Assembly: GCA_965285935.1 (NCBI GenBank)
Contig: OZ260663.1
Coordinates: 14,074,001-14,138,000, forward strand
DNA: 64,000 nt
Direction of reading: 5' to 3'
From: Ophelia neglecta
Lineage: Eukaryota
The notes beneath the pieces were generated by a model. It did not search any database. It had not been told where the DNA came from and worked only from the letters and a program-made list of their open reading frames with translations. Within the stretch, counting starts at the first letter, position 1; each line of letters begins with the position of its first letter. This document shows, one piece after another, positions 691 through 64,000 of this stretch. Both the position numbers and the translations under genes were made by a program.

Positions 691-784
691 TACTGATTTA
701 ACAATTACAGCATGTTTTTTTCTTTTTCAGGTAAGTTGTTCTGAACAATTATGATAGTGTGACCTATGTCTTCATATGGTAAGT
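691..784 (+). other. Candidate recursive splice site with 48-nt cryptic exon (731-778)
   Basis: Branch-like TACTGAT (691), poly-pyrimidine TGTTTTTTTCTTTTTCAG|GTAAGT, second donor ATG|GTAAGT at 779. Confidence 0.7.
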
Positions 785-3700
785 AAACGAGATATGTTTG
801 ACACGATGGTCAATTATTTCCGTTTAGTGGCAAAGTCGGTGGACCATTTAAAATGACCTAATTAGCCTTTTTTATGAACGTAATCATGGTAACGATTGGG
901 AAGCGTCAATAAACAATCCTTTGTCGAGTCGCTGATAAGGCTGGGGACACTCTGACACGTCATACAATGATCAAACTAATACTTTTATTCGGCCACAGGA
1001 TTAGTTTATACAATTAGTTTATCACTAATTCAGATAGCAGACATGTATCACTTTCTCCGTTGCTTACAGAACGTACCTAGATAATGAAACTATTGTAGCC
1101 GGTCAAGCCTACGGCAAAACAAAATTTTTGATTTATCTATTTTCAATATAGTAATACTATATTTAATAATCTCCGCTGATCATCTATGAAACTGGACATT
1201 TAGAATTGCCATTCCTGAAATGAAATGCCACATCTCTCTTTGGAACAAATTCAGTTCATTGTCTTTTTTTAAATTTGACATATGCTGACGTTAGGTAATT
1301 TCCCACGGGGTCCGACAATGTTATTCTGCACATACACGTCATATTTGACTCTTGGCTTAGCGATTCTTGTTAATCCATCCCTTTCCTAGCTTATTTCCAT
1401 ACAATTTATAAAAAAGCAGAAACTCGGCAAGACATCGAAGAAAAAACGGGAAAACAAGCCAAATCATTAAATCGGTCCGAATGTATCAGAAAACCAGCAG
1501 CCACAGCCCCACACACATGAGTAAATTAATCTCCAGTTCCAATAAGTAAATAAACTAAATTGCAAATGATTAAGATGTGTCAACTACTAGGCGTTCTTGT
1601 TCTCATTCGCATATTTAATTAGCACGGAGTAAACAATTGGAAGAGGTACGGTGTATTTAGTATTTTCCCATTTCTGTTTATAGCAGTGTGTATTTGTACA
1701 ATTGACATATTCAGTTAAATAAAAAGCCTGCCTCTCAAATGCCTCTCCGACACATTATACTGGCTCGATTTCGTGGGCTCGATGACAATGTCGTATATAT
1801 GTTGTGCTGACTAGTAACAGTGAAGCCTTAACGAGGTAATGGGTTGCTGCCAATTATCTTACACTGCATTCACAAATTACATTAGCAGCAATGTACGATG
1901 AATCAGGATTGTTAAGATTGATATATACTGTTAAACAGTGCCACGAGATGAGGCATTGTGGTTTCGAAAGCAGTGACATTAGCCGCTAAGACATTACAAA
2001 CGAAACTGTCAACTAAGGCGTTATACTGTTTCGGTACGACAAACAGGCTGATCATTACCACGAATAGAACCTTTCAGAGCTCAATGCCCCGGAGATGTAG
2101 ATGTGCGTCACATAATGAATGATTGTTCTAGTCCAGAGGTTGGACTTTAGAGCTCATCTCTACGCGCAAAGAAGTGTATATATGTAAGGTTCTCATACTA
2201 AACAGTAAAGAAAAGGTACATGTTGCTTGGTTTGATTACTTTGTTTTAACAAGACAACCATGATGCCAAAGTTACGGATAAACACTCCGTGGTAGTTCAT
2301 GAGGGCGCAAAATTCCTTACGTCCAAAAAGGCAATGGGAAAATAAATACCTTTGTATATCCCAGTCATGAAGTGGTATGGACGCAATTTCCGGCAAATGA
2401 ATGAAGTATTTGATATAGTTCAGGTAAGTAGAGGGCATGGTTGTGGTCCTGTATTTGAAGGCAATGTGAATTGTGAAGGAATGTCCTATTTCCCTGTTCA
2501 ATTTCACTGGAAATAAGTGTTATTCTACGTTGATAAGAGTACCAAAGTGCGATGTGTGGGCAGCTGTGTATCTATTTATATTTTTCATATATTCACCATG
2601 ATATCAGACGCCTTTCCAAACTAGTCATTATTTATATTTATGTCGTATTCCAAACAAATGGTCGTAAAAAGCGATATGTCCTAATGACCAACAACTGCCC
2701 AAGAAAAACTATCAAAGGAGTTACACATTGCATTGACTTTACATATACCACAGTCAAATTAAATAACTGCAGACGTCCCCACCGCATCACTGTATGAAGT
2801 CATTACTCATGGACCAAAGCAGTGATGTTGCAGCGGTGAAAGGAGGACTGTTGAAATTACTATTGACTGAATAATATAAATTTTTTGAAAGCAGTCTCCC
2901 ATGGAAGTTTTTTTTATGAAGGTTTATTCAGGAGGTGCTGCTACACTGTTTTACCATCCAGTCATTAAATGTCAACAAAGATTATTATATGTATCCGATA
3001 CTTCCGAATATGGTGGGTATACAAGATGCGGTATTTTCTGATTTGTTGCTTCGTTGATTTAAAGAATCAAGGAAAATGAGCTGTTGAAGCAAATGTCCTT
3101 GATGAGGATCATGCCTGTTAGTAATTAGTCCCATATTGTGCTCATTGTGTATAAACAAATTGCTAAGGCTGTAACTGCTGGATGTAATAAAGTAGTGGTC
3201 ACCTAAATTAAAAATATACTATTAGTGCAAGGGGCTAATTTGTATTTATAAATATTTTCAGACAATAACGCCTTTTAACTGGTTAAACATTGAAATTTAT
3301 GACGTGTATAATTTTAGTCCCGGGACTGGGAATGGCTTGGTAATTGTTCAGTATGCATGTAATTGTACTGTACGCCACTGTACACTTGCTCCCCTACTGT
3401 GAAAATGCTTAACCCATCGTGCTGTGCTGAAAAGACCATTGGCTTATTATAAAGATTCTTTTGGGTTTCACTTATGCCTACGCATTTTTCGCTGTCAATG
3501 ATTCCGTGCACAACCAACACTGCTTATGTAAAAAAAAAACGACAGCTGATAACCGCCATACGACGGAAAACGCCAATCAGGAAATGTCAAAATTGGTCCA
3601 AACTCATCAGGTACCGACAGCTAGAGCCATCTATGTTTATATCCCCAGCCTAATAACAGTAAATAAATTAAAAGTGATACCACTTGCAATGACAAGCAGA

Positions 3701-16250: not shown

Positions 16251-16764
16251 ATTATTATTATTATTTAATATTATTATTATTATTCGTAGCATTTTTATAG
16301 CGCTTTTACATGTCAGCTCAAAGCGCTTCACAACACAACAAGGGATTAAAAAAAGGTTGATCACGCGCAAATATAAAAATAGTCTGACAATAAATACGAC
16401 TAAAAATGTACACAATAGTTCAAATGAACTAGTCAAATGCACATTTAAAATAGTGAGTCTTAAGCCTAGATTTAAACACTGTGACCGATGAACTAGATTT
16501 TATATTAATTGGGAGGGAATTCCATAGTTTGGGAGCGCCAGTGGAAAACCTCCGAGCACCATATGTTACTGTTCTTGATCTTGGAATGACCAGAAGTAAA
16601 TTGTCATTAGACCTTAAGTTTCTCTGAGACTTGTATGGTTTGATCAAGTCTGATATATATTCTGGTGCTAAACCATTCAGGGCCTTATACACAAGAAGGC
16701 AGACCTTGAAATTAATTCTGTACTGAACAGACAGCCAGTGTAATTCACGGAGAACAGGAGTCAT
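16251..16764 (-). mobile_element. 5'-truncated L2/Crack (CR1-group) LINE, 3' end
   Basis: ORF2 C-terminus TPVLRELHWLSVQYRINFKVCLLVYKALNGLAPEYISDL...LRS...APKLWNSLP...FKSRLKTHYF (stop at 16429). 3'UTR has an AAGCGCTTTGAG...AAGCGCTATAAAAAT motif and an (AAT)n tail. Confidence 0.92.
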
Positions 16765-19700
16765 CTTACATCTGTATCCAGACCCGGTAAGCATTCCAGG
16801 CTCCAAGAATCTTTCCTTGTTATCCACTGCTATGATCTTGCATTGCTACGGCGTGGGCTTTGTGATCCGGTGTTATGCTCACATATCACTCGTTGCTATC
16901 TCCGTTTAGCACCCAGTAATTGTATGGAGGTGCTAAAAGGGCGTTTGAGAGATTCACAGCCATTCAATCCATGATACTCCGGCCCATGCACTCTGCTTTC
17001 AAGGCCGCTTGGAACACGACTGGTATTAAACTTCGACCAAGCATTAAAGCCCCGGTATTTGGAGGGCAGTGCTCCATTGATGCATGGATGGAAAAAATGA
17101 ACGGATTAAGATTGTTTTTGCCATCACTGTGTGATTATCTGCTTGGCATCTCATATGCTTTTTAGTCAATACACCAGGGCAATTAATTTGACAAGTTGCC
17201 TGACAAACTTCTGGATTACCGCAACCGTTCATGTTACTAATCTAGCGCACGTTGATCTAAACTGAGTTGCAAGGCGCTTATATTGAAATAATCCAATCGA
17301 TAACAAACGTCAAGGCTTCGAAATCGGAAGCAATGGAAGAATGTGCCATATTGCAGCTCATGTAAAGCCGTAGGTGTACCTGCGCGGTGTTTGCAATCGG
17401 TTTCTCAAAACATTCGAAGTTCCACTCAAATGTGTGAACATTTGCATGTATTAAATTAATGTTAAATGTGGTTTATTTATTATAGTGCGATCCAAACAAC
17501 TGAAAATTTCTTTTAATGTTAACGGAAAAAGCAGTTAATACTAATTGAAGATATGATATTTTACCAACCTTTTTTTTTAATTGACTCGTGTGTGGTGTTT
17601 TTCGCTCTAGACAAATAGTTTCGAAAAGTTCAGTGAACTGATATATAGTATTATTAAATTTTATTTAGCAAAATGGATAAAGTCCCCAGTATCGTTGGGC
17701 TAGGTGGGTGGTTCTGCCAGCGTTGTGGGTTAGAGTACCAGCCAATACAACAAACTCCTTTGAAATTATTATTTATTAACGGGGAACGTTGTGGCAATAT
17801 ATATGGCTTGTAAATCCATATTAATGCTTGGCCAAAAGACGCAATCCCTTAGGCATTGCCTTTTAGAGCTTCATAATTGTAAACGACACCAAAGAGCCAC
17901 CAGCATATTCATCATTTGCATCATATGTGGGTTGTCAGAAAAACGTGTCTGTGTCAATTTTAATATTTCCGACTCTAATTGTAGGCAAGAATATTCCTAT
18001 TTCAGCAGTCAAAGAGAGTATCCTCGCTATGAAAGAAACCTTGTTTCATTCATTTTTGGTCCAAGCGTATTCCGATGATTTAGTCATTTTCAATTTTCCA
18101 TTAACTCATTGCTACTTGAGATTTTGTTCTCCCAATACTCTTAATAGGAAATGGAAAACAGACTGGATATCTTGGCAGCACACAAAATTATGCGGAAGGT
18201 ATGCCCGGTAACGTATTTTATGTCACTTTCTGGTGACACAATGAATTATGTAGTATGTAAAACTGTGTACATCAAAAGGTAACGACCCCATTAATCTATT
18301 AAGAAATCAGGACAAAATGTTCGGCATAAAGTAATGTATCGGTTTTTGATTTACGACTATGGCGAGATACTTTGCCACTTAAGCCAGTGATGGTGATTGA
18401 AAAACAGAAACATTCTCTGGGCAGGTTTTTTTCTGATAAATATATACATCAGTGGAGTATAGGTGACACGATCTTAAAGTCAAATAGACATTATAGTGCG
18501 TTGTATTCTGGTGCCTCTAGAAAGCTCAGCATGAATGGTTGCACATAAGCAAATTTTTGCTAAAATAAAACAGCTGCTCATTTGTAAATTTAACCTATAT
18601 AGATTAACGAAATGTGACCCGACCTAATTTCCAAGTGATGCCCAGCCGACTGGTAAGACAGCTCGTATAAATGGCCAGAGACCTCAGTTTAAAAGGGAGC
18701 TATGACTCCATGAACCTTAATACAAGAGACTCTATTAGGGTTGACAGCTCTTTCAATAAAGTGAAAGGATCGAAAGTGATGCTGACGGCGTCCGGTACTA
18801 CTGCGGAATCAGCATGTCATGTCATTTATTTCTGTAGATGTCCTTAATAACTACTGCATGCAAAATTCCATGAGTACCACTTGAATGCATACTATAGCGG
18901 CTCTTTGCATTCAATACTATAAAGACATCTTATTCACGAACATATGGTAAGAGTGTTCGTTCGATATCTAATTATGGGTAGAAGATCATAACTTGATAAT
19001 GGTAGAAGATATTTGGAGTGCAGTCGAATTGAGTGAGATGAACGCTCAAGGTGCAGAATATGATGGCAATGCATTGCAATGACTACGGTTCCGTGCGTTA
19101 AGTCAGCCAGTTCCGTTTTTTTCTCCATGGTAAAGTTGCCATGAACTTTACAGCAATTAATACTGATGCAATTGCTAACTATGCACGTTTAGGCTATAAC
19201 TTTTAATGGATAAGTTGTGACCTTTGGGCCAAACGTAGAGAGTAGATTAAACAATTATGGGCATTAGTAGTACTTAGTAAATAGTATTTAAGATGCTACT
19301 TGCTGATTTGTTGTTCCTTGATTTCCATGGCGTAACAAAATACAGACTTGTCTTTTTTTTAATAGATCACAGCAAGAAAGCTATTAGTCACAATAGCAAA
19401 AGCAGTCCTGTTTATAATAAAGCCTGTTTCGCATTTCCAAAGTCCGGCTCCATTCACTGGTGCGTATATATACATAGTAGTATCAGGACTGGCATTCGTC
19501 CAAGAAAATATTCAACAGTATAAATCCTCGCTACTGCGAATGCTACAACAAACTTTGCTGCTGCTGCAGTTTACTACTTATCAACTCATTGCCGCTGTCC
19601 TCAATACTTCTCACAAAACCGTTACAGACAGCTTTTGCCTGGGACGCGGAGTGGTATAATGCATGAAATATGGTGCTACTGCTTAACGCCAAGTGCCGAA

Positions 19701-40101: not shown

Positions 40102-40279
40102 CAGTGAAACCTTCCTTAAAGACCACCTCTATAAGTAGACCATCTGCAAATTCAGACTACTAATATGAAGACCAAAGTATACCCTTTCAATGCAAAATAA
40201 CCTGTGTAAACAGACCGCCTCTGTAATCAGACCAGTATTTGCCAGACCCTTGGGTGGTCTTAATTCACAGGTTTCACTG
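40102..40279. mobile_element. Tc1/mariner-pogo type MITE (178 bp)
   Basis: TIRs CAGTGAAACCT / AGGTTTCACTG flanked by TA duplication (40100-01, 40280-81); internal AGACC repeats with an inverted GGTGGTCTTAA. Confidence 0.85.
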
Positions 40280-40281
40280 TA

Positions 40282-40389
40282 GTTGTATTTTACGTTTGCT
40301 TTCATGTAATCTAGTATTCATGTTTGTATTTTATGTCATTTCATGTAATATAATAGTCATGTTTGTATTTTATGTCTTTTCAGGTAAGT
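40282..40389. repeat. 39-40 bp tandem repeat overlapping the splice acceptor
   Basis: GTTTGTATTTTATGTC.TTTCATGTAAT.TA.TA.TCAT x about 2.7; a further partial unit at about 40078-40100 precedes the MITE. Confidence 0.85.
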
Positions 40390-40453
40390 TTTCTGCTCTT
40401 TAAGCACATTAATTAGGCATGCTCTCTTGCAAGAATACCAGTCCAAGGTAAGT
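40361..40453 (+). other. Candidate recursive splice site with 64-nt cryptic exon (40384-40447)
   Basis: GTTTGTATTTTATGTCTTTTCAG|GTAAGT, second consensus donor AAG|GTAAGT at 40448. Confidence 0.65.
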
Positions 40454-46679: not shown

Positions 46680-47502
46680 ATGTCCTCAGGTGCAGCAGGC
46701 AGTGTGGATGCACACAGGACTAGTTTAACGATATTAATTTGGTTTATTACCATTCTGGCCGTTGTTTCTGGGAATGTTTCCCCGGCTGAGAATGTGCAGG
46801 TAGTGCGGCTAGGAATTATTCTTCCCGCTAAACCTCCGCCTCATTGCTCGAGCATAAAAGAGGTTCAAACGGTGATGGATTTCGCCTTGGGACGGGTCAA
46901 CAATGGCTTGTTGGATAACATAAGCAGTGTTGAGGGTATAATCGGGGCTGATAACGAGCTTAAACAGGGGGAGATACTTGTCAGGAACTTAGAAGGGAAT
47001 ATTGTTCGGCTTCAGGCCAAGTATGTTGATTCCCAATGCTCGGATCTTTATGCCCCGATCGCCGCTATGAATCTATTTTATAACCGAGAGGTGGATGTTT
47101 ACTTCGGGCCCTGCTGTAAATATGCCCTCTCTCCCGTGGCCAGATACACAAACATCTGGGGGCTACCCGTCATTACGCCCGGGGGACTAACGGAAGCTTT
47201 CAGTGACAAGAGGGAGTTCCCTCTCCTGACTCGCTTCGTGGCCCCCTACGACAAACTGGCCAAGTTCATAACCCGGATATTTATTGCCTTCGGATGGAGG
47301 ATAGGCGGCCTACTATGGCACAATAACATAATATATCGTACTCTGGGCAGCTCGGAGTGTGCCCAAGTTGCCACAGCGCTTATCAGACTCATGAGAAGCA
47401 TGCCCGAATTTGATGACCCATACAAGGAAACTTTTGACGAGGGCGCTTTTGACAATTTTGATTGGGATCGTATTTTGGCAGGGATTAGGAACAATTCACG
47501 CA
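46680..47502 (+). CDS. First coding exon (copy A) of a natriuretic-peptide-receptor-type membrane guanylyl cyclase: signal peptide + N-terminal ANF_receptor ligand-binding domain
   Basis: Hydrophobic leader SLTILIWFITILAVVSG, then family motifs RLGIILP, YVDSQCSD, VDVYFGPCCKYALSPVARY, WGLPVITPGG, EFPLLTR, FGW. Ends ...IRNNSR at CGCA|GTGAGT (823 nt, phase 1), matching the known exon 1 boundary of vertebrate NPR1 (..GR|V). ORF read-through to 47591 is intron. The cyclase domain is not in the window, so an NPR-C-like product cannot be excluded. Confidence 0.92.
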
Positions 47503-50499
47503 GTGAGTATTTATTAAGGATATTTTCTAAATGTTCCAGGGTTTGTTTGCATGTCTCAACTAATCTGTCCCGTATGACTTGTTATTCATAGATAAACGCG
47601 AAAGGCCATGTACACAGAATACTATCTGATAAGGCAATCTCAGACGGTCACATTTCATATTTTGCACGCTGTCTTTCAAATAGACGTGACTAACCACACT
47701 ATCTTGTTAATAGAAAAATATCGATATAAATAGAGGTGTTGCAAGCCATATCACTGCAGTTATCAGCATGATAGCAAAACATTACAAACAGTTTTTGGCC
47801 ATCTGCCATGTTAAGTATGTAAATATGTGTGTGGCACACGGTAAGATTGATAGCTCTTGATACCAGTCAGTTTGGCCTGACTACCGTTGATGCAGGAATT
47901 ATTGTAGAACTTCCAAGTTAAGATTAAGAGCAAGATCAAATTTATATCTTGCAAAAGTGTAAATGGAATTTATTTACTGAAAGCAATTACGCCACAAATC
48001 TTTTTGGGCAGGTGATGCCTAGCAACGTAGAATATCGTTTTTCCTTTTGACTGAAGGCAGGGACGGAGGTAGAGAGGCGGTGAAAAGGTGGGGTAGAGGG
48101 GTGGGGTGGAGGTCGGCGAGTTGGTGGGGGTGCATGAATACAATTTTGAAATTTGCATACACTATATGACGTACGTAAAATTCCCATTACAAAATCCATT
48201 TAGCTTGGAAAGAAGCTTTAAGTTTAAAGTCAGAACCACCCTCACCCCTACCCGATCCTAATTAGCGTGCCACTTCTACTGTCAGTAGTGTTTTACGTGC
48301 ACATTTGACCTCATCATGTCAGATATTATTAAACATTAATTAATAATGATTTAATAGTACATGGTCAAGGCATTGTGGTAATATACACGTTCCTTGTCAA
48401 CGTTTGACGAGCGGCCTTTAAACACTGCGCTAAACCATTATCTGGTCACGCGACCCAGAACTCCCTTATGTGTACCTCTAAATCGAATAGTCAATTCCAC
48501 AATTCCAGTATTCCTAGCAAAATATATGGAGGACACTGGAGGAAACTCAGAATACAATTACTATAAGGTTGGAAATAAAGCAACAATAGAGTCTATATAC
48601 CGATTTCCGTATACAAAGGAAGGTTCATACAGCTGTCGCATAACTGTATGGTACTCTAGAGATTAATATATTTATACAGTGACCTAATTATCGCAGCCGT
48701 ATCACTACTCTATGATATCTAGTCGCGGGATCAAACCCTGGAAGGCAGTCAGCCAGCACGCTGAAGTAGCCAGCCGTGTATGAGAGGGATGCAGACATCA
48801 TTAATATTGCATCTGAAAGGAATAAATTAAACATATTTAGAACTGTAAAGGGGCAATGCATGGTATATTTGTGTCATAACAAGTCAAAAACATGACATAT
48901 CTCGTGTGTTTACAGGATTTTTATATTCGGAATGTATGGCCAATGCTTGAAATAGCCCTACACATTTATGACGTGCCTCTTCCCAGAACCGTCACAAAAG
49001 TCACTATACATCTGGTGGTCTTGTGCTAAATAGGGAATCTGCGCAATATTATGGTCACATTACAATGTGAACATACTACACGGCAGTCAAATACACGCAA
49101 ATATCTCTTGGCCGTAACCGAAGTTAATCCGCCAGACATTGAAATTTATTTTCGACACTGCAATAATATCGTGGCCGAAATACTGGTGCCTATATATGTG
49201 AATCCCTTCCGGCAGGGCGTTCGAGTCCTGATGGAATACCTTCTGCTATTACGGCTAGTAAGATGTCAGTTAATGACGGTGTATATATGTATTAGATTTA
49301 TTACCAGCGCGTCTGATTCAACAAATAGATGGATTAATATGTTTTTTTTACCCGAACACATAATGTAGGGATATGCCATGTATGACATAAAGCCAAGCTC
49401 GTTTGAAATATATGGTACATGTGATCGAAAAGGACAATTATTACCTCTAACATGATAACGAAATGACAGGTGCAGTGTGTTGGTCCGTCGTAACGAATTA
49501 AACGCGTCAATAATTCACGCTTACGTCTTTTGATGTGGCTTGCTTTAATGTATTCATCTTCTGATTTTAGTTTTTTCCGTTTCGTTTGTTCTATAGGGTT
49601 ATTTATTCAGTCGGTTCCCTTTTTTCAACAAGGGCATGCATTATCCGTTATGTTCGTTAACATGCATTATAGTGCAATTCGTCTGTTCCTAGTTGATTTT
49701 CATGATCTTTCAGCCATTTGGCAGGAGGAATAGCCGACGGATTAGAGGATTCCAGTTGTCAAAATCAAGACATGACATGTCCCTAACATAGCTCTGGTCT
49801 AACTGCCGATACTCGATATATTTTCATTAAAATCTTTAGAAGGCATCACGAGTCTGGCAACCTTTCATATTTTCATTACACAGAACCTCAGCTTCCCATT
49901 CGTAGCTCAGGCCATTTATCTTCGTCAAATCACTAAACCAACATCATACACATTTTCTAGGTATGCCACAGACAGGAGCATTTGACAGGCATTCAACGAA
50001 ACCTTGAAACTCTCCGCATCTAATATAATGTATGATTGAAATCTGTGCATGGTTGTGTTAAGAAAGTCTGCTTCTGTTATCTCAATTCTCGCACGCTCTT
50101 GTTGTGTTCCCTTCAGCCTCTTAGCACGGTAAGCAGTACACCCTAAGAGACCGATTGTTGAAAGCCTATCAGGCCAGATTATAAATGTCTTGGGAAATGT
50201 TTCTTTTGATATCTCTGACAAATGTCTGCGATGCGTAAAGATCCGGATTATGGCAGCATAAGTAGATTTCTTCGCTGAAACGATTTATTTCTCTCGCTGC
50301 AAAACAGTCATATGAATGAACCGTAGAACTAGAGACAAGGACGTGATTGTAACACACACACAACTTGTAATCTTTCTGGGTCAATGTGCAGCCTTGGAGG
50401 TGTGCATTTGATTACCGGATAAATCGTGCATATCTTTCCTGTGTGCATATCATAGGTTGATATTGATCCTTGATAAACAAGCCATGCTCAGAAGCCTGG

Positions 50500-56099: not shown

Positions 56100-56193
56100 G
56101 AACCGTACAAGAATGCTTTGGACGAGGGGACTTTTGACTTTTCTGACTCGAATCTTATTTTCGCATGGATCAGGAACAATTCACGCATTGAGT
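56097..56193 (+). pseudogene. Relic third copy of the receptor first exon (3' end only, dead donor)
   Basis: Translates HEPYKNALDEGTFDFSDSNLIFAWIRNNSR versus copy A DDPYKETFDEGAFDNFDWDRILAGIRNNSR. Ends AGGAACAATTCACGCA-TTGAGTAT versus functional -GTGAGTAT. Confidence 0.9.
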
Positions 56194-59100
56194 ATTTATA
56201 TTAATTCGTTTTGATTTAGTAATAATATTGTTTCAAAGAAAACTGACTACGTTCTGTATATGAATCACTTTCTTGTCTTTCCAACCCGACCATACCCGAC
56301 CATCAATGCTGTCAAACTATTAGGGTTAACGTAGTTATGTTGAAAAGTATCAATTAGTATTAACTGCATTATTATGGTCATGAAGATTTGTCCGAGGGAC
56401 CAAATCGTAATTTGATCAACGCTGAATGCATGAAGGGAGGGAATTGAGATAGTGTATTGGTATTCACTTTATTACACACTAGCCAAATACTAGGAATGGA
56501 TAATGCAGGTCAATTTTAACCCATGTTTTCTTACGTAATAGTTTTTTCGTTCAATCTTGCCTGCCCGAGTAATCTGATTATGTGATTCAAGTCGTGACCT
56601 ATTTCATCTGGGTAATGTAATCACAAAATGGCAGGTACGACAGTATGACAGTAGAAACCCAACTATTACTAGTAGAACATGAATAAGACACTACCGGAAA
56701 CGACACAAAACCGAAAATAAATTCATCAAGCCTAATACCCTCATTGTTGAGTAGTAAAACTCGTTCCTGTCGTTTTGCGTTGGTTTTTTAATCGGTGAAG
56801 CAGACGTTTCAACTGCATTCGTGTCTTTTTTGAAAACGCATAGTCATTGAGTTTAATATTCATCGACCATGCCTAAAGATTATACATATTCTGCCAGTGA
56901 AATAAATTCGTACCTTCTACCTTTCAAAAATTGAACAATATCTTGATCAAAGCCCTAAAACCATTAGTAAGCAGAGTGATCCATATATGGAGACATAATC
57001 AACAACATTATGGCATTGTTACATAGCAAGCAACCTCCCGTCCATGGCATTATCAATACAATGCTGTGTCTCATATACAACACGCAATACACTCACATTG
57101 GGAAGTATGAAAACATATCAAAGACTCCTCCCATTAGCATATGATTGTTTTTTTCTGACTTTTTCTGGTTTAGTGCGATGACTGAAATAAGGGAAATATG
57201 TTGACTACTTCTCAATGATCGTGTTATCAATAATAATATATTTAATATTTATTTCGGCTTAAGCTTCCTGATGATTTCGGATTGATAAAATGGGCTACTT
57301 TGATTAATAGCTGTGCTTTCTCTGCGGCTTTTCCACTTCCTCGTTTATGAAATTTAGCAAAATATGTCCTGATTACCATAGGAAACATAGATTTGTTACC
57401 AATTGCTCGGTTTAAAAACATGTTTCTAGTGAAGACCGACCAACAATGCTGAAAACGGTTGGTTTTGTACGTAAAGGTAACAACATTAACAAAGCCATGT
57501 GGCACAAGAGCGTCAAGATGTGCCCCTCTTCATGTATCAGATATGAAAGGCAATACATCAAGTTTTCATCTAGGGATGCCTGTTCCATGTTTATTTAGAT
57601 AAAGGAGCCGTCTTGGATTAGTGACCGAATGTGTATAGCGAGCCATGTCAAATCCATTATTCAAAAAGACGATGACCCACAAGCCAACCTATAATCTCCT
57701 CTCACTAGGCTTAGGAATGCTCCATCAGTAGTATATGATATCACACCAGTGTCCAACACTTCCTTGTGATTGCGTGGTGTATATAATTGGCAAATTGATT
57801 GTAATCTATTACGAAACTGCAATCAATGTGCGAATTAAAATGGAACACAGCTTGTGTAAAAAGTCCGTGCGATCATCTAGGCCAATAGTCGGTGCATTTA
57901 TGGGCCAGATAAACTGTACATCGTCTTCGACCATTATAAATTATAGAACCCATTAATTCCTAAGTACTAAAGTGTACAGATAACCAATCTCTGTTTGACA
58001 GATTAATGCCATTCGACAAGCTTTTTTTATTTTGGCTCAAAGTACATAATTAGCATGAACTGATATCCGAAATATACATCAAAACAACATAAAGACCTAT
58101 TCGTTTTTTAAATCTGTTCCAGCTCCAAAATATTAGTGCGCATTGAGGCCATAAGCTAGATAACCATTGCTTTGCAAAGAGATCTTTGTTAATCATGGGC
58201 ACGTCGTTCGCCTTTGATAATTAGAATAAAGCTAATCAGTTCGCTCTTCGCCAGATTGGGTAATATCAATGACCTATAAAAATAAGTGAGAGGTATTATT
58301 TCAATTTGATACAAGACTGTTTAACACAGCGCTTGTCAGTTTTTAATTCAGTCAGCGGTATTATATCAACATGAAACATAACTCCTAAATGACAAGCGCA
58401 GGGTGAAACAGTCATTAATCTCTAAAATAGATCGAAACGCCATAAATAAAATGCTTTGTGGTAACCCACTGGATTCAGGATTTTATTGACGAGGTTATAA
58501 ACGTTATTTATGTGACTTGGAGGATTAGCTCTCTCAGCAAAGCGGGCAGCCCAAAAATTCTTTCGTGTAGACAATTTAATTGCTTTGCTGTTTTTTCGTT
58601 TTCCACGGTGCTTGTAAACATATACAATTTTGGCGGCGGCCTAACAGTTATTTCATGCCACATTTGTATGAATTTGTTTGATTTATATTGCGCTTTGAAA
58701 GGTTCTAAAACATCATTATCGTCAATTTAACCTTTATTTAGCATGTCTAGTGTTCAACATGTATATTGCAATCGCTTTGACTGGGTTTAGGGTTGATTAT
58801 ATGTAGTGTTGCGTGCAACTAAGCAAATGTCAATGTAAGGTCTACAGCCTTTGGCTATTTCTATGCAGAAATATAACTAATATACACTATGTGTACCATG
58901 TACCATAGAAAGTTGTTGCTTGTCTGGAAACTGGTCATATTTTATGATGGTGGCACCATGTTTTGAATTTAAACACGTCTGCCCGTTAAACAGCCGAGGA
59001 GCTCGTTAAACCGCGATATTTGATATACAATGTAAGCCAAGTCAATAGGTCTGTTTTCCTTCGACTTCAACATTATACAGACTGCGGATTAAGTTTGTAC

Positions 59101-63069: not shown

Positions 63070-63937
63070 ATGCTAAAGAAAGTATTGGAAATCATTAAAA
63101 TGGCGGAAAGTATAGTGTTGTTTACAGCCGCCGGCAGATTGGATGAAAACAGGCCCAGTTTTGCAATATTATTTTCCTTTATGAGTATTTTGGCCGTTGT
63201 TTCGGGGAATATTTTCACGGCGGAGAATGTACAGGTAGTCCGGCTAGGAATTATTCTTCCCAAGAAACCCCCGACTCATTGCTCGAGCATAGAAGAGATT
63301 CAGCCGGTCATGGATTTCGCCTTGGGACGGGTTAACAATGGCTTATTGGATAACATAAGCAGTGTTGAGGGTATAATCGGGGCGGATAACGAGCTTAAAC
63401 AGGGGGAGATACTTGTCAGGAACTTAGGGGGTAATATTGTTCGGCTTCAGGCCAAGTATGTTGATTCCCAGTGCTCGGATCTTTATGCCCCGATCGCCGC
63501 CATGAATCTATTTTATAACCGGGAGGTGGATGTTTACTTCGGGCCGTGCTGTAAATATGCCTTGTCTCCCGTGGCCAGATACACAAACATTTGGGGGCTG
63601 CCCGTCATTACGCCCGGGGGACTAACGGAAGCCTTCAACGACAAGACGGAGTTCCCTCTCCTGACTCGCTTCGTGGCCCCCTACGACAAACTGGCCAAGT
63701 TCATAACGCGGATGTTAGTGTTTTTCGGATGGCGAAATGCCGGGATTCTTTGGCACAATAACATACTATATCGTTCTCTGGGCAGCTCGGAATGTGAACA
63801 AGTCGCCACATCATTAATCAGACTTATGCGAATCATGCCGGAATTTGTTGAAACATACAAAGAAATATTCGACGAACATGCTTTCGACCAATTCGACTGG
63901 GATAATGTTTTGTTCGGGATAAGGAACAATTCACGCA
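63070..63937 (+). CDS. First coding exon (copy B) of the same NPR-type receptor guanylyl cyclase
   Basis: Paralog of copy A with the same motifs and same phase-1 donor CGCA|GTGAGT (GT at 63938-63939). Start is ATG 63070 or, with better context (aaaATGg), 63100. Confidence 0.92.
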
Positions 63938-64000
63938 GTGAGTATCTAACATATCTGTTATAATTAGGCTTCCATCGATAAAATCACAACCTACTGATTC

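What the first reader, a model, noticed from the sequence alone, without database searches (positions are those of the whole stretch)
691..784. Recursive splice (ratchet) site 1 with 48-nt cryptic exon
Seen: a strong acceptor directly fused to a perfect donor (TTTTTTTCTTTTTCAG|GTAAGT), with a second GTAAGT donor 48 nt downstream. Known: this AG|GT plus short cryptic exon layout is the signature of recursive splicing in long Drosophila and vertebrate introns. Inference: the window begins inside a very long + strand intron that is removed stepwise. The exon has an in-frame-dependent stop pair (TGATAG), so it does not look coding.
Basis: partly seen in the sequence, partly recalled or inferred. 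Interest (0 to 1): 0.75.

Follow-up and report, generated by a model that had tools for sequence, protein, structure and literature searches.

The report
Candidate recursive splice site ladder
A splice acceptor fused directly to a splice donor, followed by a 48-base dummy exon, sits with two look-alike units inside the 200-kb-plus shared intron of a receptor guanylyl cyclase gene that has eight alternative first exons, so this giant intron is probably cut out in steps as in fruit flies, although no RNA data exist to prove it.

Summary
In detail...TTTTTTTCTTTTTCAG|GTAAGT at window 730/731 and a second GGTAAGT giving a 48-nt unit (731-778) with stops in all three phases. It is not alone. The same architecture recurs on the + strand at window 40384 (64-nt unit) and at C5:14035657, 38.3 kb before the window (48-nt unit). 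That is 3 on the + strand and 0 on the - strand in 277 kb, against about 0.003 expected. The three share no flanking homology and are single-copy. All lie in the sense strand between variable first exons V4 and V5 of a receptor guanylyl cyclase gene with eight phase-1 first exons and one constant exon set. Window 1-46679 is therefore intron for V1-V4 transcripts, 200-277 kb long. The motif class is rare genome-wide and clusters by strand. Stepwise (recursive) removal is the best reading (about 0.6). This scan has already reported at least eight similar candidates elsewhere in this same genome. This one is a further member, and its new feature is the variable-first-exon setting.

The parts
691..713 (+). 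Region upstream of the acceptor with candidate branch points (TACTGAT 691-697, TTAAC 698-702) and an upstream AG at 709-710. This AG is AA in the other haplotype.
   Evidence: Read. The 710 G>A change is. The branch points are my inference from the YTNAY consensus (recalled), not tested.
714..730 (+). Pyrimidine tract plus CAG: the 3' splice site of ratchet site S1.
   Evidence: 13 of 15 pyrimidines in the scored tract.
731..736 (+). GTAAGT donor placed directly after the acceptor AG. This is the 5' splice site that would be regenerated after an upstream exon is joined here.
731..778 (+). 48-nt cryptic RS-exon of S1. It has stops in all three phases, and in the host intron's phase 1 it reads GKLF*.
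779..784 (+). Second donor GTAAGT (context ATG|GTAAGT) that closes the RS-exon.
40363..40383 (+). Pyrimidine tract plus CAG of ratchet site S2. The tract is the second copy of a 19-nt direct repeat (40319-40337 and 40358-40376).
40384..40447 (+). 64-nt cryptic RS-exon of S2. It begins with GTAAGT and in phase 1 reads GKFSAL*.
40448..40453 (+). Second donor of S2 (AAG|GTAAGT).
46680..47502 (+). Variable first exon V5 of the receptor guanylyl cyclase gene: ATG, signal-peptide-like start, ANF_receptor profile 18-130, phase-1 donor GCA|GTGAGT. It marks the downstream end of the exon-free gap that holds S0-S2.
63070..63937 (+). Variable first exon V6, 83% identical to V5, with phase-1 donor GCA|GTGAGT.

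Best explanation
Window 714-784 is a recursive splice site: a ratchet point with a 48-nt cryptic RS-exon. It is the middle one of three such units. S0 is at C5:14035657, S1 is window 731, and S2 is window 40384.

All three lie in the sense strand of the giant shared intron of a receptor guanylyl cyclase gene. That gene has eight alternative first exons (V1-V8) and one set of constant exons.

Proposed mechanism (inferred, not shown). Transcripts that start at V1-V4 must join their phase-1 donor to constant exon C1, 200-277 kb downstream.
- The V donor is first joined to the S0 acceptor. The short unit is recognised as an exon with the help of its downstream donor.
- That junction recreates a strong donor, CTG or GAG|GTAAGT.
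- The recreated donor is joined to S1, then to S2, and finally to C1.
- Each time, the dummy exon is removed together with the next intron segment.

If the downstream donor of S1 or S2 were used instead, the mRNA would carry a premature stop.
For: Anatomy. There is a perfect (Y)nCAG|GTAAGT junction with a second GTRAGT at +48, +48 and +64 nt in S0, S1 and S2.

Strand and chance.
- In the 277-kb V1-to-C1 span the strict class counts 3 on the + strand and 0 on the - strand.
- An independence estimate gives 0.003 expected full units per strand, Poisson P(>=3) about 5e-9.

Not repeats or duplicates. Each unit is single-copy in the 762-Mb genome. The three share no flanking homology, so the shared motif is not inherited from a duplication.

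Host intron.
- Eight paralogous ANF_receptor first exons lie on the + strand.
- All eight have phase-1 donors, and the C1 acceptor is phase 1.
- The 13 constant-exon pieces are single-copy in the 338 kb fetched.
- Seven of the 9 constant-exon pieces scanned against Pfam hit ANF_receptor (C-terminal part), kinase or cyclase domains; 2 had no hit. Cyclase-domain hits in this area were only at C5:14245603-14246340.

Regenerated donor. V1-V4 end in CTG, CTG, GAG and GAG, so the regenerated donor keeps G at -1.

Genome-wide class.
- The strict unit pattern has 15 hits against 3 in the reversed control. Seven of the 15 sit in two repeat arrays, which leaves 8 places. These include S0, S1 and another same-strand pair.
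- Of 62 hits to the 18-mer with up to 1 mismatch (reversed control 32), 19 keep CAGGTAAGT. Among these 19 there are 4 same-strand pairs closer than 100 kb, against about 0.02 expected by my arithmetic.

Against: - There is no RNA evidence of any kind. No RNA run holds or accompanies this stretch, and the three runs laid are DNA-like contigs.
- The ladder covers only the V4-V5 gap. The last step, S2 to C1, would still be 103 kb, and V1 to S0 is 95 kb. The 96-kb and 80-kb introns of V5 and V6 have no strict unit. Segment shortening therefore cannot be the whole story.
- The segments are about 39 kb, far longer than the 9-15 kb reported for flies (PMC6110457, passage).
- The RS-exon donors of S1 (ATG|GTAAGT) and S2 (AAG|GTAAGT) are as good as the regenerated donor. 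The usual 'ratchet donor is stronger' rule is therefore not clearly met.
- Whether V1-V4 are expressed is unknown.
Confidence: 0.62

Rival explanations
1. The units are ordinary regulated cassette or 'poison' exons. They would be spliced in between a V exon and C1 in some conditions to shut the mRNA down by nonsense-mediated decay (S1, S2) or to add 16 residues (S0). On this reading the GTAAGT at their 5' ends plays no resplicing role.
For: Each unit has a good acceptor and a good downstream donor. S1 and S2 carry stops in phase 1. S0 is 48 nt and open in phase 1, reading GKYIVMLRLYKNTSSG. The downstream donors are as strong as the ratchet donors.
Against: Three of three units begin with exactly GTAAGT directly after the AG. 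An ordinary exon has no reason to do so, at roughly (1/4)^6 per exon by my arithmetic. The same fused motif clusters by strand elsewhere in the genome. This rival overlaps the main reading, because RS-exons can be included at times (PMC8605326).
Confidence: 0.15
2. The units belong to a separate, unannotated + strand transcript (for example a long non-coding RNA) that lies in the 103-kb V4-V5 gap, and not to the guanylyl cyclase pre-mRNA.
For: All three units lie only in the V4-V5 gap, not elsewhere in the 277-kb span. There is no RNA data to assign them to a transcript.
Against: No first exon or other exon of such a transcript was found. The orientation is the same as that of the cyclase gene. 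No V-like or constant-like exons lie in the gap. Even in such a transcript the fused AG|GTAAGT would still point to recursive splicing.
Confidence: 0.08
3. The strong GTAAGT motifs are U1 snRNP landing sites. They would protect the giant intron from premature cleavage and polyadenylation (telescripting; recalled concept, no call) and would not be splice sites that are actually used.
For: Two consensus donors lie within 48-64 nt in each unit, inside a very long intron.
Against: This does not explain the pyrimidine tract and CAG fused in front of the first donor in all three units. GGTAAGT alone is not enriched in the window.
Confidence: 0.05
4. Chance occurrence of splice-like motifs in AT-rich non-coding DNA, with no function.
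For: The window is 35-40% G+C with many T runs. Three of 100 shuffles gave two matches to the fused motif with up to 1 mismatch.
Against: The full unit is expected about 0.003 times per strand, and three are seen on the sense strand with none on the antisense strand. Genome-wide, the class clusters by strand.
Confidence: 0.05

Closest known systems
Drosophila intronic ratchet points with cryptic RS-exons (Ubx m1/m2, kuz, Bx; Hatton 1998, Burnette 2005, Duff 2015, Joseph 2018, as described in PMC8605326, Introduction read)
   Same: The acceptor is fused to a GTAAGT donor. A short unit of about 50 nt is closed by a second donor. The exon content is non-coding or out of frame. The site lies in the sense strand of a very long, first-type intron, with several sites per intron.
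   Different: The host is not an insect; the scan's earlier notes call it 'probably annelid', which I did not test. The segments are about 39 kb against 9-15 kb typical in flies (PMC6110457, passage). The downstream donors are as strong as the ratchet donor. The host intron is shared by several alternative first exons. No RNA proof exists.
Vertebrate recursive splice sites with RS-exons acting as a 'binary splicing switch' (Sibley 2015, seen only as summarised in PMC5126111, one passage, and in PMC8605326)
   Same: Two donors compete, and that competition decides whether a stop-containing RS-exon is skipped or kept. The sites lie in very long introns of long genes.
   Different: Here the upstream partner would be one of four alternative coding first exons. 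Their last three bases (CTG or GAG) set the strength of the regenerated donor. Nothing is known about inclusion.
Clustered variable-first-exon genes (protocadherin, UGT1A type; PMC1885805 seen in a search listing only)
   Same: There are eight first exons, each with an ATG, a signal-peptide-like start and its own donor. All are in the same phase, ahead of one constant exon set.
   Different: The variable part is half of the ligand-binding domain of a receptor guanylyl cyclase. Among the 15 papers listed, none holds 'recursive splic', so I found no report that ties recursive splicing to such arrays.

Membership tests
Recursive splice site (ratchet point with RS-exon) | Juxtaposed 3' and 5' splice sites, (Y)nNCAG|GTAAGT | tested here: met
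   TTTTTTTCTTTTTCAG|GTAAGT at 714-736.
Recursive splice site (ratchet point with RS-exon) | Lies in the sense strand of a long intron of a gene | tested here: met
   The site lies between the V4 donor (C5:14017603) and the C1 acceptor (C5:14217585), on the same strand. The intron is 200 kb for V4 and 277 kb for V1. This is a gene model from sequence only.
Recursive splice site (ratchet point with RS-exon) | A downstream 5' splice site defines a short cryptic exon (about 50 nt) | tested here: met
   ATG|GTAAGT at 778/779 gives a 48-nt unit. S0 is 48 nt and S2 is 64 nt.
Recursive splice site (ratchet point with RS-exon) | Cryptic exon content is non-coding or frame-breaking | tested here: met
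   S1 has stops in all three phases. S2 has a stop in phase 1. S0 is the exception: it is open in phase 1 and a multiple of 3.
Recursive splice site (ratchet point with RS-exon) | The regenerated ratchet donor is stronger than the RS-exon donor | tested here: inconclusive
   The regenerated donor is CTG or GAG|GTAAGT. The RS-exon donors are ATG|GTAAGT (S1), AAG|GTAAGT (S2) and GGG|GTGAGT (S0). No scoring model was available.
Recursive splice site (ratchet point with RS-exon) | Motif conserved at syntenic positions in related species | not testable with these tools
Within the species, two of three contigs keep both cores unchanged, which says little.
Recursive splice site (ratchet point with RS-exon) | RNA intermediates: exon-to-ratchet junction reads, saw-tooth coverage, lariats | not testable with these tools
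   No RNA run was found. The runs laid are DNA-like contigs.
Variable-first-exon gene array (protocadherin / UGT1A type) | Several first exons, each with its own start codon and donor, all in one phase, ahead of a single constant exon set | tested here: met
   There are eight V exons with phase-1 donors and a phase-1 C1 acceptor. The constant pieces are single-copy in 338 kb. Seven of 9 pieces scanned carry Pfam domains.
Variable-first-exon gene array (protocadherin / UGT1A type) | Each variable exon has its own promoter and is spliced directly to the constant exons | not testable with these tools
   No RNA data. No acceptor-like signal was seen just upstream of the V5 ATG (by eye).

The most novel reading that the evidence does not exclude
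The three-rung ladder is a relay that exists specifically for the four distal variable first exons. It would carry their donor stepwise across the 103-kb exon-free gap to just 6.3 kb in front of V5.

At each rung, the choice between the regenerated donor and the dummy-exon donor would act as a gate. It would yield either a productive receptor mRNA or a stop-containing one. At S0 it could yield a 16-residue insertion instead.

Recursive splicing would then be a layer of control over which ligand-binding half a clustered receptor gene expresses, in a lophotrochozoan. As far as my searches show, recursive splicing has not been described in that group.
Probability: 0.12. Interest if true: 0.7.

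Novelty: new member of a known kind. Interest (0 to 1): 0.5.

Why it matters
Recursive splicing has been demonstrated in flies and vertebrates. In the library I searched, no paper ties it to annelids or molluscs. For 'recursive splic' with 'annelid' there was 1 paper with one mention of each term and an unrelated title. For 'recursive splic' with 'mollus' there were 2 such papers. I judged all three from the listings and did not open them.

If this site and its two partners are used, they add to the genome-wide evidence from this scan that stepwise intron removal is a general bilaterian solution for giant introns.

They would also be the first case I could find of a ratchet ladder inside the shared intron of a variable-first-exon receptor gene. 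In that setting the identity of the upstream first exon sets the strength of the regenerated donor.

It gives a simple, testable prediction: V-to-731 junctions in nascent RNA, and inclusion of a 48-nt poison exon when GTAAGT at 731-736 is weakened.

Tried and rejected
RNA evidence. The look-up of sequencing runs listed no RNA run, only three runs of one sample and one study. Laying them gave DNA-like contigs, which were useful only for polymorphism.

Origin by duplication. A MAFFT alignment of +/-400 nt around S0, S1 and S2 showed no homology and did not even align the cores. Rejected.

Repeat origin. S1, S2 and S0 are each single-copy. Only window 40250-40290, upstream of S2, is the end of a dispersed repeat.

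Other candidate rungs.
- C5:14155782 (CAG|GTGAGA, no second donor), C5:14194396 and C5:14210293 are weak. The relaxed class is not strand-biased once the three strict sites are removed (+5 against -3). I do not count them.
- C5:14217697 is the ordinary donor of constant exon C1.
- Window 2421-2429 (CAG|GTAAGT) has a poor pyrimidine tract. It lies inside 1519-3675, which contigs of two runs skip. Rejected as a rung.

Equal spacing. The distances are 39,074 and 39,653 nt. One 100-N assembly gap lies in the S0-S1 segment outside the window, so that distance is nominal. I draw no conclusion from the near-equality.

A second constant exon set or dead V exons in the V4-V5 gap. None was found by tblastn. 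The only V fragments are at window 56100-56198 and at C5:14201376.

Relaxed genome-wide pattern. One search was swamped by a 43-nt satellite on C2 and is uninformative.

ORF all-against-all blastp. One search was mostly repeat noise. It was useful only for confirming that the eight V exons are paralogues.

Protein homologues of V5.
- There were 25 hits, the best at 65% identity.
- I fetched 6 of the 25. All 6 carry the conserved ...NNSR exon-end motif followed by further residues, like the window's own ORFs that read on into the intron. I therefore take them for genomic ORF calls, which give no splicing evidence.

Paralogous array on the - strand (C5:12.97-13.05 Mb). I could not fetch it. None of the 15 strict-pattern hits lies there.

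Spliced model. I did not build or search a joined V+C spliced model. Exons were searched one by one.

Papers.
- PMC8605326: outline and Introduction read.
- PMC6110457, PMC2773006 and PMC5126111: passages by 'find' only.
- 10.1101/006163 and PMC1885805: search listing only.
- Sibley 2015, Joseph 2018, Burnette 2005 and Hatton 1998: not seen, cited through those texts.
- Supplements were not opened. S5 Fig of PMC6110457, on segment lengths, may bear on the comparison.

Taxon. The 'probably annelid' label comes from earlier notes of this scan. I did not test it.

Full report
OBSERVATION

One search shows, on the + strand, a pyrimidine tract at 714-727 and CAG at 728-730. GTAAGT follows directly at 731-736. 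A second GTAAGT lies at 779-784, preceded by G778. The unit between them, 731-778, is 48 nt and holds TGATAG at 752-757.

In the window:
- The fused motif YYYYYYNCAGGTRAGT (up to 1 mismatch) occurs twice, both on the + strand (721-736 and 40374-40389). The expectation is 0.38, and 3 of 100 shuffles reached two.
- CAGGTAAGT occurs three times, all on the + strand, against 0.44 expected.
- GGTAAGT alone is not enriched: 9 against 6.4 expected, and 23 of 100 shuffles reached 9.

The signal is therefore the fusion and the paired layout, not donor-like words as such.

A THREE-RUNG SET

The second window site (CAG|GTAAGT at 40383/40384) has its own second donor, AAG|GTAAGT, at 40447/40448. This gives a 64-nt unit.

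The window is G000:C5:14074001-14138000. I fetched 144 kb upstream and 130 kb downstream of it and scanned the 338 kb on both strands.

A third unit of the same build lies at C5:14035657, 38,343 nt before the window. It reads TTTTCTTTTCAG|GTAAGT with GGG|GTGAGT at +48. I call the three units S0, S1 (the finding) and S2.

In the 277-kb span from the V1 donor to constant exon C1:
- The strict class (at least 11 of 15 pyrimidines, Y at -3, AG|GTAAGT) counts 3 on the + strand and 0 on the - strand.
- Relaxed classes are not strand-biased beyond these three.
- None of the other five relaxed + strand sites has a second donor of the GTRAG form 20-160 nt downstream; one of the three relaxed - strand sites does.

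An estimate from the local frequencies of AGGTAAGT, of the pyrimidine-tract condition and of GTRAGT gives 0.003 full units expected per strand. The Poisson P(>=3) is about 5e-9.

The three units are each single-copy in the genome. They share no flanking homology. They are therefore neither repeat-borne nor copies of one another. What they share is only the splice-signal layout.

THE HOST

Two open frames in the window (46680-47591 and 63070-63963, + strand) start with ATG and a hydrophobic leader. They match the N-terminal third of Pfam ANF_receptor.

A six-frame search of the genome finds eight such exons on the + strand of C5, between 13.94 and 14.20 Mb. They are mutual paralogues.

Each has a phase-1 donor:
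- V1: CTG|GTGAGT
- V2: CTG|GTATGA
- V3 and V4: GAG|GTAAGC
- V5 and V6: GCA|GTGAGT
- V7: GAG|GTAAGT
- V8: GAG|GTAAGG

Downstream lies one set of exons.
- I scanned 9 of the 13 constant-exon pieces against Pfam. Seven hit: the rest of the ANF_receptor domain (profile 179-213 and 271-327), a kinase-homology domain and a guanylate cyclase domain. Two had no hit.
- The first constant exon, C1, has the acceptor ...TTCCTTCACAG|TTGTGG at C5:14217585, also in phase 1.
- The 13 constant pieces occur nowhere else in the 338 kb.
- Cyclase-domain hits in this area are only at 14245603-14246340 (26 weaker matches of that call were not listed).
- No V remnants lie in the V4-V5 gap.

It follows that window 1-46679 is intron for any transcript that starts at V1-V4.

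Distances:
- V4 donor to C1: 199,982 nt
- V1 donor to C1: 277,167 nt
- V4 donor to S0: 18,054
- S0 to S1: 39,074
- S1 to S2: 39,653
- S2 to the V5 ATG: 6,296
- S2 to C1: 103,201

One 100-N gap lies in the S0-S1 segment outside the window. That distance is therefore nominal, and I make nothing of the near-equal spacing.

WHAT THE UNITS WOULD DO

In phase 1, the phase of the host intron:
- S1 reads GKLF-stop. S1 has stops in all three phases.
- S2 reads GKFSAL-stop.
- S0 is open and 48 nt long, so it would add 16 residues in frame.

After a V1-V4 exon is joined to a unit, the regenerated donor is CTG|GTAAGT or GAG|GTAAGT, with G at -1.

This matches the published model. In that model a ratchet point is recognised together with a cryptic RS-exon of about 50 nt. 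The regenerated donor then normally wins over the RS-exon donor. The dummy exon is removed, and its content is poorly conserved and usually out of frame (PMC8605326, Introduction). In the vertebrate version the same competition acts as a switch towards stop-containing mRNAs (PMC5126111, passage).

These steps are inferred from anatomy. None is shown here.

GENOME-WIDE CONTEXT

The strict unit pattern YYYYYYNCAGGTAAGT-N30-70-GGTRAGT has 15 hits in 762 Mb, against 3 for the reversed control.
- Five hits are one tandem array on C8 and two are a local repeat on C7.
- The other eight places include S0, S1 and another same-strand pair on C5, 57 kb apart.

The 18-mer TTTTYTTTTCAGGTAAGT with up to one mismatch has 62 hits against 32 in the control.
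- 19 of the 62 keep CAGGTAAGT.
- Among these 19 there are four same-strand pairs closer than 100 kb, where I compute about 0.02 expected.

The scan's notebook lists at least eight earlier candidates of this kind in the same genome, all without RNA data. The class, not only this site, is non-random, and this finding is a further member of it.

RESULTS AGAINST THE READING, AND GAPS

- No RNA run exists for this organism in the index.
- The three runs laid are contigs of one sample. They differ from the window at 1-1.8% of positions over 65-1128. The differences include 710 G>A, one T fewer at 715, and 774 A>G inside the unit. In two of the three contigs every difference is listed and none touches the two cores. 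With so few core bases this says little.
- The ladder does not divide the whole intron. V1 to S0 is 95 kb and S2 to C1 is 103 kb. The 96-kb and 80-kb introns of V5 and V6 have no strict unit.
- The segments of about 39 kb are several times the 9-15 kb typical of flies (PMC6110457, passage).
- The downstream donors of S1 and S2 are as good as the regenerated donor, so inclusion cannot be excluded.

COMPARISON AND NOVELTY

The site works like, and by every sequence criterion fits, a Drosophila-type ratchet point with RS-exon. The criteria that need RNA or relatives could not be tested.

Searches of the paper library for 'recursive splic' together with mollus-, annelid, or related terms gave only incidental co-occurrences. 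Among the 15 papers listed for protocadherin or variable exon, none holds 'recursive splic'. I found no report of recursive splicing in this animal group or in a variable-first-exon array. Subscription papers are not covered.

I class it as a new member of a known kind, credible but unproven.

VERDICT

- Probability that the site is used for recursive splicing: about 0.6.
- Interest: 0.5.

Noticed in passing
G000:C5:14035645-14035710 (38.3 kb before the window): A third ratchet-type unit, S0: TTTTCTTTTCAG|GTAAGT with GGG|GTGAGT at +48. Its 48 nt are open in the host intron's phase, so it could be a frame-preserving 16-residue micro-exon.
   Followed up: partly
window 1519-3675: Contigs of two of the three runs skip 2,157 nt here (joint 1518 to 3676). 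All runs have loose ends at 1518 and 3675, and word depth spikes at 1401-1600. This looks like a polymorphic insertion or a repeat boundary. It contains the third CAGGTAAGT of the window (2421-2429), which has a poor pyrimidine tract.
   Followed up: partly
window 40319-40337 and 40358-40376: A 19-nt direct repeat (CATGTTTGTATTTTATGTC), 39 nt apart. The second copy supplies the pyrimidine tract of S2.
   Followed up: no
window 40250-40290: The end of a dispersed repeat with at least 40 near-identical copies genome-wide, just upstream of S2.
   Followed up: no
G000:C2:117400707-117404934 and beyond: A 43-nt satellite in which every unit carries TTCTACAGGTAAGT. It swamps relaxed genome-wide searches for ratchet motifs: 289 forward hits.
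   Followed up: no
window 56100-56198: An isolated fragment similar to the last 33 residues of V5 (61% identity), between V5 and V6.
   Followed up: partly
window 16429-16827 (- strand): A 132-aa open frame that looks like the tail of a retroelement protein. It has no Pfam match.
   Followed up: no
G000:C5:12973153-13045607 (- strand): A second, smaller array: four ANF_receptor first-exon matches and one cyclase-domain set on the opposite strand, about 1 Mb away. No strict ratchet unit lies there. The DNA could not be fetched.
   Followed up: partly
G000:C5:14155782: CAG|GTGAGA with a moderate pyrimidine tract, 41.4 kb after S2 and 17.8 kb after the V6 donor, but with no second donor. It is a possible weak fourth rung or noise.
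   Followed up: partly
G000:C2:18706545 and 18750409 (+); C5:98095571 and 98101558 (+); C5:87523562, 87580530 and 87609659 (-): Other same-strand groups of perfect fused acceptor-donor motifs. These are likely further ratchet ladders in other long introns.
   Followed up: no
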